Shown here piece after piece: positions 9,256 through 16,246 of a stretch of DNA of 64,000 nt (positions are counted from its first letter, which is position 1; the number at the start of each line of letters is the position of its first letter). The position numbers were made by a program, and so were the translations under genes. The DNA comes from Lepidodermella squamata. Taxonomy: Eukaryota > Animalia > Gastrotricha. The stretch is taken from contig JBLDXI010000064.1 of assembly GCA_047495785.1 (NCBI GenBank), positions 62,001 through 126,000 of the forward strand, in the 5' to 3' direction. The notes beneath the pieces were generated by a model. It searched no databases, had not been told where the DNA came from, and worked only from the letters and a program-made list of their open reading frames with translations.

Positions 9256-12099
9256 ATGAATCTGTTTATTTGCCTTAGCCTGTGGCTCCTCGTCGTAGAC
9301 GGGAGATTTATCTCGAAACTATTATATGGCTTGCCTGGTAAAGCGCCGCCAATACCAAGATGGTGGCGCTGCTTCTCCGCTTTGAATAACAAATTCAACG
9401 GCTGTCGAAACGACAGCAACCAATTCGAGTATAAGGTTAACATCATCGTTAATTGTGCTAATCAGTAACGTCTTTTCTGTTTCTAGTCCGTCATTCCGTT
9501 TACACTTTACGATACTTGCGTTGATGGGGTGTGTTTGAAAATATTTTCCAATAGCTGAGGGAACCCTCCGGCTACAGTCGCCAATAATTTGATTTGATTT
9601 TTTTGCTATGAAGAACGTGAAACTCTGCTACGACCATGTGGAATTCAGCTATCGATGCATTGAAGGCATATGGCAGTGCAAGAAAACCAACGAAATCCAG
9701 GTTTGTGCAGGAAGAAAAAAGTGTGTGTGGCTTTGTTTATCATTTCCATTTTGCTATCAATTTGCAGGCTGGATACTACAATACAGGAACCTTCAGACGA
9801 AATTATGCTAACTGTATTGCTGCCTCGAAAAAATCACCCGTGAGTGAAACAAATGATAGCTAGGTTTATTAGTATTGAAATGTCTGATAATACATAACTT
9901 ATGTATTATCAGACATATGTAACACTCTTCAATATCGTCACTATCGTCACTATCGTTCACTCTTCAATTAATTACAATTCCCAGCATAAAGTTATTTTTT
10001 TTCAAAATTGTCTTTCGATTTCAGTTGAAGCCATTTGAACGGTGCTTTTCGGGCGGCAAATTTGTTTCCTGTTTTCCTCTTTCCCTCGGCTGTCCAGCCC
10101 ATTTGGTGAGTCGAACAGCCACGCCCGAACTGCTTTCACATTTTTTTAAAGGACGTTAACGACGATCTACCTACCTACAATAATCTAGAATCATGTTTGA
10201 GCGGTGCAGGTAATTTCGGCAAAAACATATTCACCTATTTGAACTCTCTTTACCATTATGGCTTTTAATCACAATTTTACAGTGCCACAAGCTGTTATCG
10301 ATGACCAAAAGCCGCACGTACGCTGTGTGGATAAGAAGTCGGGTAATTTTGCGGGTTGCCGCCTCAAAAGCACAGGCTGCTCACCTGATGTGGAGATGTA
10401 CGCGCCGCGGCCTTTTGCAAACAAGAAAATGTGTCTGAACGGGGTTAGTACACTTTGAAACTGTTATAAACAACAATAAGTTACTTGTGATTTTCCAATG
10501 AAATACAACGCCAACTTTTCTGTGTACATTTCTGTTTAGAATTCTGTGAAATGCAACACAACATCATCCGGCCCAACTTGTGGTTCTTTCTGCCAGAATG
10601 CCTCAGATATAGTTTGTTTATCAAATAATGTATTTCTACCTTTCTTTTCTACCGAGATATAAACAGATCTTCGCCTTATCGGATTCGAGAGACTTCGCGA
10701 CTAATTATCAGCGGTGCCGACTTAGTGGGAATATTGTGAGTGACGTTATTTCTTTTTATTCCAAAACTACCAAAAAAACCATGAATGTAAAATTATGCAA
10801 TTACCTTGTATTCCGGATATATGTCGAGTAGATGAATAACAACAAGCTTCTGTTTCTACGCAACAATATTAATTTCTTTGTTCTTTTCGTGTAGCCTCGT
10901 TCGGCCGATCGGTCACTTAGTCACTATAATGCTTCTTCGGGCGTTTGTTGTGAAATGTAAAGGTTCCTTGGGAATAATACTGTATGGACTCGACATTAGC
11001 CACTTTTCTGCTCGACAGGAAAAAATCAACAATTTTGATGCGAGAAAATCAAATGAAAAATGCGTTTTTTGCATTCTATCAAAATCACCATTTTTACGCT
11101 TCCGCCCATTATTGAGCCAAAAAATATAAGTTTACCGGAGGAGCCATATACCCTCGCCATTATTTTAGTTATTGAACAGGTCTTTACAGATATAGATACA
11201 GCTAATCAAGAGCTTTGCGATGTTACCGAATACAATTTGTTATGAAATTGTTTAGGCATTATTATAATATATTTGATTTTTTGCAGAGAAAGTAATTACT
11301 TTGAGGAAAGAATTGAGGAAAGATACATGACTTTTCATCTCAATGAGAAGGTTCATGAATATTCTCTTATTTTTTTCTTCGTAAATCAGTGTAAATAATG
11401 GGCTCTATTTTAGAAATTTCCACTCTTGCTGTTTGAAATATTGATTTGGCTTTGTAGAAACAGATTCTACATCTTAGTCTCGATATACAGTGTCAAAGTA
11501 CAAATACTTGTTGCTGGGTCGCTCGCGATAGTGGGGCTGGTCGGGTTGGTGGGTGGGCCTATTAATCAATTGATAGAATCGCGTGCTGCCAAGCCCCATT
11601 GATCGAGTATAGTTGGATTATTCAGTTTTTATTTTATTCATTGTACATTGTAAAAAATTATGCGTATTCTACACTAATTTCTTATAACTATCATGATGTT
11701 TACACGAGATTATGGTTTTTATTCTTGTAGAAACGTCCGAAGACTTTCACTGTTGTAGTGAATGACAAAGGAGTAACGCAAGATGAAGCCAGAAAGGGTT
11801 GTTTGAAGAAGCCAAACTCAAAACTGGCGGTAATCGAAACCGAAGCTGAGCTCCAAGCTATTCATGCAGCGATGTTGGACGTTGGGCGCGACTATGCAAT
11901 GATCGGCTTTACGAGAATTGACGGCGAGTGGTCGTGGGATGACAGTGCAGTTTCCCCCTATTTAGGCATCCCACCCTGGTTGGGCGAGTTGAAGCGATGT
12001 GTTGGGGTGTTGGAATTGGCCGGCGACTTGTTTTTGTTCGATCAAGCATGCAATTCGACGGAAACCCGCGATTACGTTTGTGAGACTCGCCCATTTTGA
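9256..12099 (+). CDS. Gene B: secreted Cys-repeat (x5) + single CTLD protein, multi-exon
   Basis: Signal peptide MNLFICLSLWLLVVDG, WWRCFS module, HVRCVDKKSGNFAGCRLKSTGC exon, terminal CTLD exon ~11731-12099 (MIGF..WSWDDS..PPW..YVCE). Confidence 0.85.
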
Positions 12100-12742
12100 C
12101 AAGGAATCCAATCGATTTCTGAGTTCTGTTATATTTGATGCTGATGAGCTCAATTGATGGGCGTTTCTTGCCCATCAATTCGTGTAACTTGCATGGGAGT
12201 TTGCGAAAAGTAAAATGGATTCACTAATTCTTTCTTGCCTCTTTAACACTTTAAGTGCCCAAATTACACCAAAAAGAACCTTGACTTCCGAAACTAAGTT
12301 CCAGTAGAACATGACGGAATTTTATCACTGCATGTTTTGTAGGAATATTATTTCGGCACACCATTTCGAAACCAAGTATCGGAACTACCGATATTTTTCA
12401 CCTGAACTTTAAATAAGATATTTATTCTGAAGCTCAATTTCGGCAAAATAAGCATAAAGCAGAACAGTGTGATACATTTTTCACATTATGACATAATACT
12501 TTATGACATAACGGCATAACAGCACTTACTTACAGCACAGAATGAGACAGAACAAGGCCATTCAAGTCATTCAAGTCATAATATCAGTTTTGACATCCAA
12601 TGTCGACTGTCACTCGCGAGGCTCTCGCTTAAGCGATTTTTTAGGTGCATCAGATGAGCAGCGTGAAGTTGTGCGCAAATTTGCGGCCGATTTCCGATGG
12701 TCCAGCGCAAATTGTTTTTCAACAGTTAGCAAATAGTTAAGT

Positions 12743-13819
12743 TTAGTTTAGCAGAAAGTTGTTTCTTGGCGCCTCACCACAGAAGTCACGTAGTTTACCA
12801 ATCTGAGGTGGTAAATCCTGTCGAGCCGGTGTTGACGTAGAAGCACCGCCAGGACCGGGTGAGAGCTGCATCGTGTGAGCAAGAGGGTACCAAACCTTTT
12901 GTCCCACGCTCCAGCGACCTTCCACTTCTTTGCTGAGAATTGTGATGATTTGAAACCGCGTGGCTCTTTCGCCAGCTATTTTTTCTGTTACCCGCACGGC
13001 CAGCGCCAGCTTGGTTTTCTCTGCTCCTTCGACGCTAAGGAGGATATGGTCCGGAGGCGCATCAGGCGCAACTTTTCTAGCCATCGGCTGAACTATTGGC
13101 TCATCACCACCATCGACATCATCAGAGTCGAATGGGTTGGAATCCAGAAAACTTAGACGTGGAGTTGGATGAGGTTTTGCCGATCGACGAGCTTTTGCCG
13201 GCTCAGCAGCTTGCTCGTGCTCTTCTTCACTTTCATCAGATTTGCCATCGTCTTCATCATTCGAGCGATCTTCCTCTGATCCTTCCTCACCACTTTCCTC
13301 TTGATCGTCCGTATCCGATTGGTCACCGTGGCCTTCTGCGATAGGTCCGCCATAGATATCCCCAGCATCGGCAGACTATCATTCGAAAACCATTTATAAT
13401 AAAATATACACAAGATATTTTGATAAGTAACTCACTTCAACTGAGCCTTCGTCGCTATGATCGCTCGCATCATCGGCCTTGTCCTTGATACATCGTTGAA
13501 AATCTTCATTACTCCGCCCATCATCGCGAATGGAGTTAGGTTTCTCCGGATGCTTGAAGAATTTCGAGGCGCAGAAAATAGTCTTATCCAGAAAACCGTA
13601 GACAATGATGTTGCCTTTCTTCTGCAAAGCACTAGCGTTGTTCCGAAAATAGCTGTCAGGAATGTCTTTCGTGTTCTTAAATTTAGCCGCCGGATAGTAC
13701 GTTCGAACGTGACTAGTCCAGTTAGCATAGCCGACCTCGCTGAACAGGTCAGGTTCGGGGTAGAAACGCTCTTGAGGCATGCTCTTGTCACCTTTTGGAG
13801 CGGACGCATCCTTGCGCAT
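12743..13819 (-). CDS. Second, divergently transcribed gene within the piggyBac; ~338 aa, unknown function, central acidic tract
   Basis: Exon 13819-13436 (MRKDASAPKG..GSVE), phase-0 60-bp intron GTGAGT..GATAG (13435-13376), then exon 13375-12743 open to the stop (SADAGD..DDQEESGEEGSEED..MARKVAPD..). The true 3' end could involve a further exon. Confidence 0.7.
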
Positions 13820-14060
13820 GATTGTAGACAATTTTATTTGAAAAACTTTGATGGTTGAGAATCGATTTCTCTGCTCTAAATCAAAACTCAATACTACGCA
13901 TTGAAATAATTTAATTGAGGTTTGACTCGAACCAAACTCTCGTGCTTGATGTGCCATAATTACTAGGATAATAGCCATTTCAATGAATGAGTGCTCGATT
14001 TGATTTTGATAGCTGGATCTAATCCCAAGGCTGTTGCTAGCCGGATCTTCTTGCCAAACT

Positions 14061-15555
14061 ATGGCCCCAGTTTGGCGATTAGCTTATCAGTCATTCAAGC
14101 CTAAAAGATTTCACTTCCAACCGCGTGAGCAGCGTCCTCTTTGTGCCGACGCATTCGAACTCTATCTCAAAATGATACAAGCTAAAAAACTGTTTGCTGA
14201 CATCGCCACGTGGACTAATGAATTCGCTTCCCAGAACCGCTTCATCTTCTCAAATCCTTCCACCCGTTAGGTTTTCCGATAAAACTCGCCTCCAAATTGC
14301 ATTATTAATTCAATTAGGAAGAGCTCGATGGCGTAGAACCAATGCGCGTGAAATTGCGGGCTATTTCGGCATTATTATGGAGATGGGGTTCGAACATGGC
14401 TCTACTATCGTGGACTATTGGTCCCGCCGACGTCCTGGTCCAAGGTTTATGTCCGGAAATCGTTTCCAGCTGCTTTCCAGGGCTATTTGTTTTAACCCTC
14501 CGAATATTACGCAGAAACGCCTTGAACGTCACCGGCTGGCACCCCTTCAAGCTTTGGTTCGTCGGCTGAATAAGCGATTTTCCCTGTTACGATCACCGCT
14601 GCGCTGCCTTGTCATCGACGAATCGGTGATGAACTTCCGAGGAAAATTAGCATTCAAACAATTCAACAAGTCGAAGAGGCACAAATATGGGATAAAAATT
14701 TATCGCCTTTGTGACGCTACTGGATATTGTTACCGGTTCGAAGTTTTCACCGGCAAAAGGCCTGATGAACATGCCACTGCGAACCTTTGCTTGCAACTCA
14801 TGCGTGATAACTTGGACCGAGGTACTTTACTGATGGATTATTCTAGATTTTCCATAGAAATAAGCAAATTTATAGAACATGTTTGATTCAATACTTTTTT
14901 ACTGCGGAACCACTATTATTATTTTATTTATGCGAGATCATCGCACTTCCGAGTTGATTAAAAGTTCGCAACTAAAATTGATTAGGCCGTCAGAGAACCT
15001 CAAGTAGCAATAACTTTTTCCTGAATAGGTCACATTCTTTTTACCGACAACTACTTCACCTCATACTACCTCGCTCGTGAACTGCGAGAAAGACGAACAC
15101 ATTTGGTGGGAACCTTGAAGAAAAATAGGGATGGCAATCCGCCCGAAGTTGTTCAACGAAACCTCCAAAAAGGGGGCTTCCTGGCTGCCACCGATGACGA
15201 TGGAACTCTGATCTTTCGCTTTTTCGATCGACGCGAAGTCATGTTCTTGACAACGTTCCACAAAAATCGCAAAGCCGTGTCACACTCCAAGCGAAATCGC
15301 TTCCCCAAATTACTCCCTAAAGCAGTCATCGACTACAACTTGTGCAAGGTTGGCGTTGACAAGGAAGATCAAATGTCGTCCTATCATTCAGCGCTACGAA
15401 AATCGAGAAGGTGGGAACTCAAGGTAGCCGTGGAATTACTCCTAAATAACGCCGTTGTCAACACTTGGTGCCTGTTACGAAAAATGGATCGATTTATGGA
15501 TGTATCGATTCGAGATGTGCGAAAAAAGATCATCGCTGGCTTAACCCGGTTATGA
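14061..15555 (+). CDS. piggyBac transposase (DDE_Tnp_1_7-type), three exons
   Basis: Exons 14061-14265, 14318-14821 and 15029-15555 splice in frame. Motifs IDESVMNFRGK..KQF..KRHKYGIK, FTDNYFTS, VGTLKKNR and YNLCKVGVDKEDQ supply all three catalytic Asp. No C-terminal Cys-rich domain seen. Confidence 0.92.
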
Positions 15556-16246
15556 ATTGGGCTATTCGCTATTCTATCAGTGATTTTGTTCAGCAGGATG
15601 CTCATTCAGCTTTTATATAATCTTAGTCGGCAACTCTTGGCTATGAAAGTTTTCGTATTTCGGTACTTTATTCCGGCACTCAAGGTTATAAGTTTCGATA
15701 AATGTAAACGATAAAAAGTTACGAATAAATATACCGGTACTAAGTTTCGCCAAGTTCTATCGGAACTTAGTTTCGAAAGTCAAGGTTCTTTTTGGTGTAA
15801 TTTGGGCACTTAAAGTGTTAACTCTTTAATGCCTCAAACAGTTGCTCCAAAAAGTTCTATAGCCTGTAGCCTACATTCCCTCTCTGGAACAGCTTTTTTA
15901 AACAAGTCACTTTTCACCCGTCACACATCAAAAATAGCGCTCGGCTGCAAAAAATAATTATTTGACCATCGTGGTCTTGAATTTTTGCAAGGCGGTTCCA
16001 GCGAGGGATACGTTGGCTACGGCTTAAAATGAAGTTTTGGTGGATTCAGATTTTTCAGATTTTAATTCTGAAAATCTGAAGTGATTCCGCTCAGTGATTC
16101 GATGTAGCGTGATCGAGCACAATCCACCGGAAAAACATCATTAATAAATTTCAATTCATGTTGAGCTCAATACTTCACGATGATAATTATATCCCAATTT
16201 ATAGAGGCCAGTGGGCAATTCAATTTATTTTTCAGTTCAACTGCGA

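What the first reader, a model, noticed from the sequence alone, without database searches (positions are those of the whole stretch)
12247..15817. Two-gene piggyBac: short transposase plus a divergent accessory gene
Seen: perfect TIRs and TTAA TSD enclose a 3-exon transposase with an intact DDD triad. It appears to lack both the long acidic N-terminal region and the C-terminal Cys-rich DNA-binding domain. A second spliced ORF (~338 aa, with a central D/E-rich tract) runs head-to-head with it, ~240 bp between the likely ATGs. Knowledge: canonical piggyBacs carry one, usually intronless, ORF; two-gene layouts are typical of Harbinger, MuDR, CACTA and Kolobok. Inference: ORF2 may be a required partner replacing the missing domains, or an anti-silencing factor, defining a distinct piggyBac subgroup. 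Perfect TIRs suggest recent activity.
Basis: partly seen in the sequence, partly recalled or inferred. Interest (0 to 1): 0.82.

Follow-up and report, generated by a model that had tools for sequence, protein, structure and literature searches.

The report
Two-gene piggyBac transposon lacking zinc finger
This is a real, recently inserted piggyBac-type jumping gene whose cutting enzyme has lost the two end regions thought necessary for jumping, and which always travels with a second gene with no detectable relatives; that gene is probably a helper, but it is broken in this copy.

Summary
Window 12247-15817 is a 3,571-bp piggyBac element with TTAA duplications and perfect 41-bp inverted ends. 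It encodes a three-exon, 411-aa transposase that is only the DDE_Tnp_1_7 core, with the DDD triad intact, about 38 aa ahead of the core and nothing after it. A two-exon ORF2 starts 241 bp away on the other strand.

ORF2 is not a one-off capture. The same head-to-head pair recurs in a sister copy (97% identical) and in three more diverged lineages of this genome. ORF2 is 45-50% and about 30% identical to two of these; the third is a fragment. Synonymous sites are saturated. Other piggyBacs here keep the zinc-finger tail. On the exon-3 tree, the tailless transposases form one clade.

ORF2 has no detectable relative, domain or confident fold, so a helper role is inferred, not shown.

In this copy, the last 20 codons and the stop of ORF2 come from a 96-bp retroelement fragment. 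It replaces 164 bp of conserved coding sequence. The sister copy has a 34-bp frameshift deletion.

The scan found this two-gene family before on other DNA of this genome (s1-430864, s1-379678). I found no description in the literature searched.

The parts
12243..12246 (.). Left TTAA target-site duplication
   Evidence: The alignment with the C3 copy starts exactly here.
12247..12287 (+). Left terminal inverted repeat, 41 bp perfect, starting 5'-CACTTTAAGTGCCC. Imperfect symmetry continues to about 12355.
   Evidence: Family B ends also begin TTAA-CACTT.
12289..12376 (+). Left subterminal region with two CGAAACYWAG motifs (12289-12298 and 12367-12376). They are mirrored by two on the minus strand at the right end. 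Possible protein-binding sites; the evidence is weak.
   Evidence: 4 matches in 64 kb, all inside the element ends, against 0.58 expected.
12707..12802 (-). 96-bp patch identical to the 3' end of a dispersed non-LTR-type retroelement (the stretch just before its AATAAA and (ATGAGA)n tail). It replaces 164 bp of ORF2 coding sequence and supplies the last 20 codons and the stop of ORF2 here.
   Evidence: at least 25 copies at 92-100% identity; the C3 copy and the degenerate relatives L050 and L051 keep the 164 bp.
12743..13375 (-). ORF2 exon 2 as it stands in this copy (210 codons plus stop). It holds the D/E/S-rich tract, a basic stretch and the first conserved C-terminal block (RFQIITILS...W.VGQKVWY). 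The conserved tail, with the PPKKRK motif, is missing.
13376..13435 (-). ORF2 intron, 60 nt, GTGAGT...ATAG, phase 0. Family B has an intron at the same position and phase.
13436..13819 (-). ORF2 exon 1 (128 aa), an aromatic-rich N-terminal domain and the best-conserved part of ORF2.
13820..14060 (.). 241-bp spacer between the two divergent start codons. A bidirectional promoter is presumed but not tested.
   Evidence: The same head-to-head layout occurs in families B and C.
14061..14265 (+). Transposase exon 1 (68 codons plus 1 nt). It is 56% identical to family B and 37% to family C.
14318..14821 (+). Transposase exon 2, DDE_Tnp_1_7 profile positions 31-201. The first catalytic Asp is at 14617-14619.
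15029..15555 (+). Transposase exon 3 with stop, profile positions 207-349 of 349. The second and third catalytic Asp are at 15046-15048 and 15358-15360. No Cys-rich tail follows.
15777..15817 (-). Right terminal inverted repeat, 41 bp perfect.
15818..15821 (.). Right TTAA target-site duplication

Best explanation
Shown: this is one copy of a piggyBac lineage with two genes. One gene encodes a minimal transposase, the catalytic and dimerisation core only. It lacks the roughly 100-aa N-terminal disordered region and the C-terminal cross-brace zinc finger (CRD) that canonical piggyBac uses to hold its own ends. The other gene, read divergently from a shared spacer of about 200-240 bp, encodes a protein with no detectable relatives. 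That protein has a conserved aromatic-rich N-terminal domain, an acidic tract, a basic stretch (a PPKKRK motif in family A) and a conserved C-terminal domain. The pair has stayed together through at least three old splits of the lineage, with ORF2 constrained at the protein level.

Inferred: ORF2 is a transposition cofactor that supplies what the transposase lost. The likely functions are recognition of the subterminal DNA, nuclear import or chromatin targeting, as the Myb-like partner does in PIF/Harbinger elements.

This copy inserted recently at a TTAA. Its ORF2 then lost its conserved tail to a 96-bp retroelement-derived patch, so the copy probably depends on ORF2 made by other copies.
For: - Element structure and ends.
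- Transposase core with DDD and nothing after profile position 349.
- The CRD is detectable in other piggyBac families of the same genome (C16, C54, C4, C46) but not near the two-gene copies.
- ORF2 lies next to the short transposase, head to head, in family A (C64, C3), family B (C55, C31, C73 twice, C44/C67/C102), family C (C15) and a fragment on C38.
- A versus B: synonymous differences are saturated (pS 0.73-0.97). Non-synonymous pN is 0.36-0.40 for ORF2 and 0.17-0.30 for the transposase.
- The ORF2 intron position and phase are shared by A and B.
- Families A, B, C and an outside relative (P0001) form one clade with SH-aLRT 100, nested among CRD-bearing piggyBacs.
- Literature: the CRD is essential for piggyBac transposition and binds repeats at the ends (PMC8086355). 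Deleting the N-terminal region impairs transposition (PMC9499001).
Against: - No domain, fold or relative was found for ORF2, so no DNA-binding or transposase-binding activity can be named.
- The structure models are unreliable, with pLDDT of 47 and 34.
- The complex prediction gave no answer.
- Both family A copies have a damaged ORF2. The differences between them are mostly non-synonymous (11 of 13), so selection is seen only between families, not between copies.
- No expression data were available.
- Co-occurrence was tested in one genome only. The outside relative P0001 sits on a 1.4-kb contig that cannot show whether ORF2 is present.
Confidence: 0.55

Rival explanations
1. ORF2 is kept by the element but is not needed for cutting and joining. 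It would be a regulator or host-interaction factor, for example a chromatin tether that steers insertion, an anti-silencing protein, or a dampener of transposase activity.
For: - ORF2 is conserved with the element.
- Its acidic and basic low-complexity tracts and one weak Tudor_3 hit (E = 0.014 in one member) suit a chromatin-associated protein.
- ORF2 evolves about twice as fast as the transposase.
- Both family A copies tolerate a broken ORF2 while their transposase frames stay open.
Against: - It leaves unexplained how a transposase without a CRD finds its own ends, when the CRD is reported as essential (PMC8086355).
- The Tudor hit is not significant, and the PWWP profile comparison failed.
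Confidence: 0.28
2. The tailless transposase obtains end recognition in trans from something other than ORF2. Candidates are the CRD-bearing piggyBac transposases of the same genome, or the stand-alone CRD genes that earlier scan notes report in this genome. ORF2 would then be incidental cargo.
For: - CRD-bearing piggyBac families coexist in the genome.
- Earlier notes s1-374066 and s1-373937 report arrays of CRD-only genes; I did not check these here.
Against: - The two-gene families have their own distinct ends (5'-CAC...), shared between A and B.
- ORF2, not a CRD gene, is what travels with the transposase in every lineage.
- Incidental cargo would not stay constrained across saturated synonymous divergence.
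Confidence: 0.1
3. ORF2 is a captured host gene fragment or a chance ORF with no function.
For: - No homologue was found outside the element families.
- Both family A copies are damaged.
Against: - It is present in the same position, orientation and exon structure in at least three lineages at 30-50% amino-acid identity, with saturated synonymous sites.
- No host paralogue was seen outside piggyBac contexts, apart from two short degenerate fragments on C34 and C4.
Confidence: 0.03

Closest known systems
Canonical piggyBac-like elements (T. ni piggyBac/IFP2 and insect PGBD4-like elements; nearest database hits at 38-39% identity, e.g. P0002-P0012)
   Same: TTAA target duplication, terminal inverted repeats, a DDE_Tnp_1_7 core with the DDD triad, and cut-and-paste transposition implied.
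   Different: - No C-terminal Cys-rich domain, where most relatives carry a 65-90-aa tail with 6-8 Cys.
- Only about 38 aa before the core, instead of a disordered region of about 100 aa.
- Spliced transposase.
- A second conserved gene.
- Ends begin CAC...GTG rather than the CCC...GGG of T. ni piggyBac (the latter from my own knowledge).
PIF/Harbinger two-gene transposons (DDE transposase plus a Myb/SANT-like DNA-binding partner)
   Same: Two separately encoded proteins travel in one TIR element. The transposase lacks an obvious end-binding module, and the proposed division of labour matches. This is a functional analogy only.
   Different: - Unrelated transposase superfamily and target site.
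- ORF2 has no Myb/SANT or any other Pfam domain.
- A requirement for ORF2 has not been tested.
Ciliate PiggyMac with its PiggyMac-like partners (domesticated piggyBac machinery; PMC6143343, PMC8086355)
   Same: The activity of a piggyBac-type catalytic subunit is spread over several polypeptides.
   Different: - Those partners are themselves piggyBac-derived paralogues, host genes, and they keep their CRDs.
- Here the partner is unrelated to the transposase and is carried on a mobile element.
Families B and C of the same genome (earlier scan findings s1-430864 and s1-379678)
   Same: Same architecture: a short tailless transposase head to head with an ORF2 homologue, TTAA duplications and CACTT termini.
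   Different: - Family A is 67% identical in DNA and 45-50% in ORF2 protein to family B.
- Family A keeps transposase intron 2, shared with C and lost in B.
- Both family A copies have a damaged ORF2, while family B copies have an intact ORF2 of about 450 aa.

Membership tests
piggyBac superfamily (defined by transposase core and target site) | Transposase with a DDE_Tnp_1_7 (PF13843) RNase H-like core | tested here: met
   exon 2 E = 4e-30 (profile 31-201) and exon 3 E = 1e-27 (profile 207-349), both far above the 22.4-bit cut-off.
piggyBac superfamily (defined by transposase core and target site) | Catalytic DDD triad present | tested here: met
   The Asp in VIDES, TDNYF and GVD lie in columns that are nearly invariant across 39 transposases.
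piggyBac superfamily (defined by transposase core and target site) | TTAA target-site duplication flanking terminal inverted repeats | tested here: met
   TTAA on both sides of both family A copies and of family B, with 41-bp perfect TIRs here.
Canonical piggyBac-like element architecture | C-terminal cysteine-rich (cross-brace zinc finger) domain on the transposase | tested here: not met
   - The stop follows the last core position directly.
- There are 0 residues and 0 Cys beyond the core, against 65-90 aa with 6-8 Cys in most relatives.
- The PF13842 scan finds CRDs in other families of this genome but none near these copies.
Canonical piggyBac-like element architecture | N-terminal disordered region of about 100 aa | tested here: not met
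   Exon 1 is 68 aa, of which about 30 correspond to profile positions 1-30. That leaves about 38 aa, and they are not acidic.
Canonical piggyBac-like element architecture | A single gene (the transposase) between the ends | tested here: not met
   A second conserved gene is present in all lineages of this clade examined.
Harbinger-like two-component system (functional class, not homology) | The second protein has a recognisable DNA-binding domain (Myb/SANT-like) | tested here: not met
   No Pfam family at E up to 10 in any ORF2 member except one Tudor_3 hit at E = 0.014. No PDB sequence match.
Harbinger-like two-component system (functional class, not homology) | Both proteins are required for transposition and they interact | not testable with these tools
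   The complex prediction returned 'no answer'. This needs excision and interaction assays.
PWWP / BEN domain protein (proposed by earlier first readers for ORF2) | Profile-level similarity to PWWP (N-terminal domain) or BEN (C-terminal domain) | tested here: not met
   - hhalign of the ORF2 N-terminal profile against four PWWP domains of this genome: probability 0.08%.
- No PWWP or BEN hit in hmmscan at E up to 10.

The most novel reading that the evidence does not exclude
piggyBac can exist as a split, two-component transposon. In this reading, end recognition and nuclear targeting have moved from the transposase's zinc-finger tail and N-terminal region to a separately encoded protein with no detectable relatives. 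The lineage may have arisen as an escape from host repressors built from stand-alone piggyBac zinc-finger domains. Other notes of this scan report arrays of such CRD-only genes in this genome; I did not check them.
Probability: 0.12. Interest if true: 0.85.

Novelty: new variant of a known kind. Interest (0 to 1): 0.62.

Why it matters
The zinc-finger tail is treated as indispensable for piggyBac. It is reported as essential for transposition (PMC8086355), and the largest mining study used it as a filter for 'active' elements (PMC13461360). Another survey analysed only transposases of at least 500 aa (PMC10813416). A young, multi-copy lineage without the tail would be missed by such surveys.

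If ORF2 proves to be the end-binding or targeting subunit, two things follow. It would show that piggyBac, like Harbinger, can divide transposition between two proteins. It would also offer a naturally modular system, a small catalytic core plus a separable targeting factor, of interest to those engineering piggyBac vectors.

It also gives a testable case of how a transposon replaces an essential DNA-binding module.

Tried and rejected
Searches for what ORF2 is:
- Pfam on each exon and on every member of both ORF2 alignments gave nothing, apart from low-complexity noise (BUD22, CDC45) and one Tudor_3 hit at E = 0.014.
- The exhaustive phmmer search of 1.84 billion representatives with ORF2 exon 1 gave 0 hits.
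- The word and HMM search gave 0 hits with the N-terminal profile and with the family B C-terminal domain.
- The PDB profile search gave only peroxiredoxin at E = 0.08, treated as chance.
- ESM Atlas gave no usable hit.
- PWWP was tested by profile-profile comparison and rejected.
- No BEN match was found.

Structure and binding:
- The AlphaFold2 models of both ORF2 domains were too poor to use (pLDDT 47 and 34). No fold search was run on them.
- The complex prediction (family B transposase ORF with the ORF2 N-terminal domain) returned 'no answer', which counts neither for nor against binding.

Other checks:
- The Rfam hit to snoRNA sR2 at 13234-13297 scores 25.7 bits against a gathering score of 42 and lies inside the acidic-tract coding sequence. 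I rejected it as chance.
- The subterminal motif CGAAACYWAG is confined to the element ends. However, one of the two pairs is simply part of the extended TIR. The shorter AAGTTTCG is only weakly enriched in family B and absent in family C. I do not rely on it.
- The search for related loci with the ORF2 profile could not run because no conserved stretch was long enough.
The tree uses database relatives instead.
- The accession SRR19603261, source of the outside relative, appears in no paper searched.
- Whether PGBD5 lacks a CRD could not be settled from the papers read, so it is not used as a comparator.
Full report
**Method note.** Both genes are spliced. I searched, aligned and folded them exon by exon by reference and never joined exons into one sequence. 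Residue numbers for the full proteins come from counting codons. The tree uses the exon-3 region only.

**1. The element.**
- The sequence reads TTAA|CACTTTAAGTGCCC...GGGCACTTAAAGTG|TTAA, with TTAA at 12243-12246 and 15818-15821.
- The two ends are perfect inverted repeats for 41 bp, and 81% complementary over 113 nt.
- A whole-genome DNA search (121 Mb, 151 contigs) finds one other near-full copy, G000:C3:2513240-2516853, at about 97% identity.
- That alignment starts and stops exactly at the TTAAs, and the flanks are unrelated. This fixes the boundaries at 12247-15817. It also rules out the internal TTAA at 12251-12254 as the junction.
- A diverged paralogue of the flanking lectin locus (C64:30132-30929) matches both flanks at 75-83%. 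It has only about 116 nt where the 3.57-kb element sits. That fits an insertion, although it is not an allelic empty site.

**2. The transposase.**
- The exons are 14061-14265, 14318-14821 and 15029-15555, with GT..AG introns of 52 and 207 nt. The spliced product is 411 aa.
- Pfam DDE_Tnp_1_7 covers profile positions 31-201 in exon 2 and 207-349 (of 349) in exon 3.
- Exon 1 is conserved in families B (56%) and C (37%). It supplies the first 30 or so profile positions, leaving about 38 aa ahead of the core.
- The three catalytic Asp (VIDES, TDNYF, GVD) fall in columns that are nearly invariant across 39 transposases.
- The stop codon follows the last profile position. The 262 nt that remain are end repeats with no Cys-rich frame.
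- A genome-wide PF13842 scan finds Cys-rich domains directly downstream of the cores of other piggyBac families (C16, C54, C4:944k, C46). It finds none near this clade.
- In an alignment with database relatives, most carry 65-90 further residues with 6-8 Cys. Families A, B, C and the outside relative P0001 have none.

**3. ORF2 in this copy.**
- Exon 1 is 13819-13436 (128 aa). A 60-nt intron (GTGAGT..ATAG) follows, then exon 2 at 13375-12743, giving 338 aa.
- Its ATG is 241 bp from the transposase ATG.
- The 96 bp at 12707-12802 are 100% identical to many dispersed loci. At those loci they are the last 96 nt before the AATAAA signal and (ATGAGA)n tail of a non-LTR-type retroelement.
- Here the piece has no tail and no duplication of its own. 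It replaces 164 bp that the C3 copy retains. The degenerate relatives on C75 and C15 also retain those 164 bp. The patch is therefore the derived state.
- The patch supplies the last 20 codons and the stop. It removes a tail that reads on in the C3 copy through ISIS...PPKKRK...IRLGVIFGQEYEI.... That tail is conserved in family B.
- The C3 copy has a 34-bp deletion in the acidic tract (window equivalent 13243-13276), which shifts the frame.
- No intact family A ORF2 was found. The transposase frames of both copies are open.

**4. ORF2 belongs to the element.**
- Protein searches of the genome with each ORF2 exon find homologues only beside short piggyBac transposases, always head to head.
- Family B is 45-50% identical in ORF2. 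Its copies lie on C55, C31, C73 (twice) and a stretch shared by C44, C67 and C102.
- Family C, on C15:1114-1116k, is about 30% identical.
- There is also a fragment on C38, and two short degenerate remnants on C34 and C4.
- The C55 copy of family B (L043:2888-6668) has 80-nt TIRs at 98%, TTAA-CACTT ends, and an ORF2 of about 450 aa. Its ORF2 intron has the same position and phase as in family A.
- Between A and B, synonymous differences are saturated (pS 0.73-0.97). pN is 0.36-0.40 for ORF2 and 0.17-0.30 for the transposase. ORF2 is therefore constrained, though it evolves about twice as fast as the transposase.
- Between the two family A copies, 11 of 13 coding differences are non-synonymous. 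This is the neutral decay expected of individual copies.

**5. A distinct clade.**
- The closest database protein is P0001 (Logan SRR19603261), at 67% identity. It also ends at the core, and its contig shows the same intron 1.
- P0001 is not encoded in this genome (best match 68%), so the clade exists elsewhere. Its 1.4-kb contig cannot show whether ORF2 is present.
- The next relatives are insect-type elements at no more than 39% identity, and they carry CRDs.
- In a quick maximum-likelihood tree of the exon-3 region (67 rows), A, B, C and P0001 form one group on a long branch with SH-aLRT 100. The group is nested among CRD-bearing sequences. The careful search did not finish, and the genome's own other families could not be added.
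- The position of transposase intron 2 is shared by A and C and is absent in B and P0001.

**6. What ORF2 is.** It remains unidentified.
- No Pfam family and no PDB relative.
- No hit among 1.84 billion cluster representatives, nor in word and HMM searches with either domain.
- No Atlas neighbour.
- The PWWP and BEN proposals made for sister copies were not supported.
- The models were of low confidence, and the complex test gave no answer.

**7. Mechanism.**
- Established knowledge: the piggyBac CRD binds repeats at the transposon ends and is essential for transposition (PMC8086355). Deleting the N-terminal region impairs excision (PMC9499001).
- A multi-copy, young lineage whose transposase lacks both, and which has kept one extra gene through old splits, most simply uses that gene to supply a lost function. 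The candidates are end binding, nuclear import (PPKKRK in family A, a basic tract in B) and chromatin targeting.
- This is inference. The rival readings are an element-borne regulator, or trans-supply of a CRD by other genes.

**8. Organism and literature.**
- The assembly statistics (121.2 Mb, 151 contigs) are close to the MDA-HiFi assembly of the gastrotrich Lepidodermella squamata (122.8 Mb, 157 contigs; PMC11660948). An earlier scan note named the same species. I did not verify this by sequence.
- That paper does not mention piggyBac.
- The surveys I read filter on the presence of a CRD, or on transposases of at least 500 aa (PMC13461360, PMC10813416). They would therefore miss this clade.
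- I found no description of a two-gene piggyBac.
- The scan itself reported the family earlier on other DNA of this genome (s1-430864, s1-379678). My tests agree with those notes.

Noticed in passing
window 12707-12802; also L008-L020: A dispersed non-LTR-type retroelement family has a 3' end of the form ...GC-AATAAAA-(TGAGAA)n. It has at least 25 copies at 92-100% identity. A tail-less 96-bp piece of it has replaced 164 bp inside the piggyBac. This looks like repair or template-switch filler rather than a normal insertion.
   Followed up: partly
window 12311-12397 and 15617-15783 versus the C3 copy (L002): The two family A copies differ by about 0.6% across the coding core but by 9-20% in the subterminal non-coding parts. 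Uniform neutral decay would not give this pattern. It suggests a mosaic origin or gene conversion between subfamilies.
   Followed up: no
L041 (C44), L042 (C67), L049 (C102): The same stretch of about 9 kb, carrying a family B element, occurs on three contigs at 99.99-100% identity. These are haplotigs or assembly duplicates, so they count as one copy.
   Followed up: partly
L045 (G000:C73:514000-523999): Two family B copies lie as an inverted, transposase-to-transposase fold-back, with one transposase truncated. The likely source assembly was made from MDA-amplified DNA, which is prone to such chimeras.
   Followed up: no
window about 11470-11604: A dispersed repeat of about 135 nt (at least 35 copies at 80-87% identity) lies in the left flank, just upstream of a C-type-lectin-like ORF (11758-12099). 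It is probably a SINE or MITE.
   Followed up: no
G000:C64:30132-30929 (outside the window): A diverged paralogue of the flanking lectin locus matches both flanks of the insertion site but lacks the element.
   Followed up: partly
G000:C16, C54, C4:944k, C46:1516k, C7, C25, C60, C30/C48 and others: The genome holds many other piggyBac families (72 DDE_Tnp_1_7 matches). Several have the usual Cys-rich tail and none has an ORF2 homologue nearby.
   Followed up: partly
L050 (C75), L051 (C15:1666k), L052 (C42:2455k): Degenerate family A-like remnants keep the left end and the 3' part of ORF2 (75-88% identical) but no transposase. They are internally deleted derivatives.
   Followed up: partly
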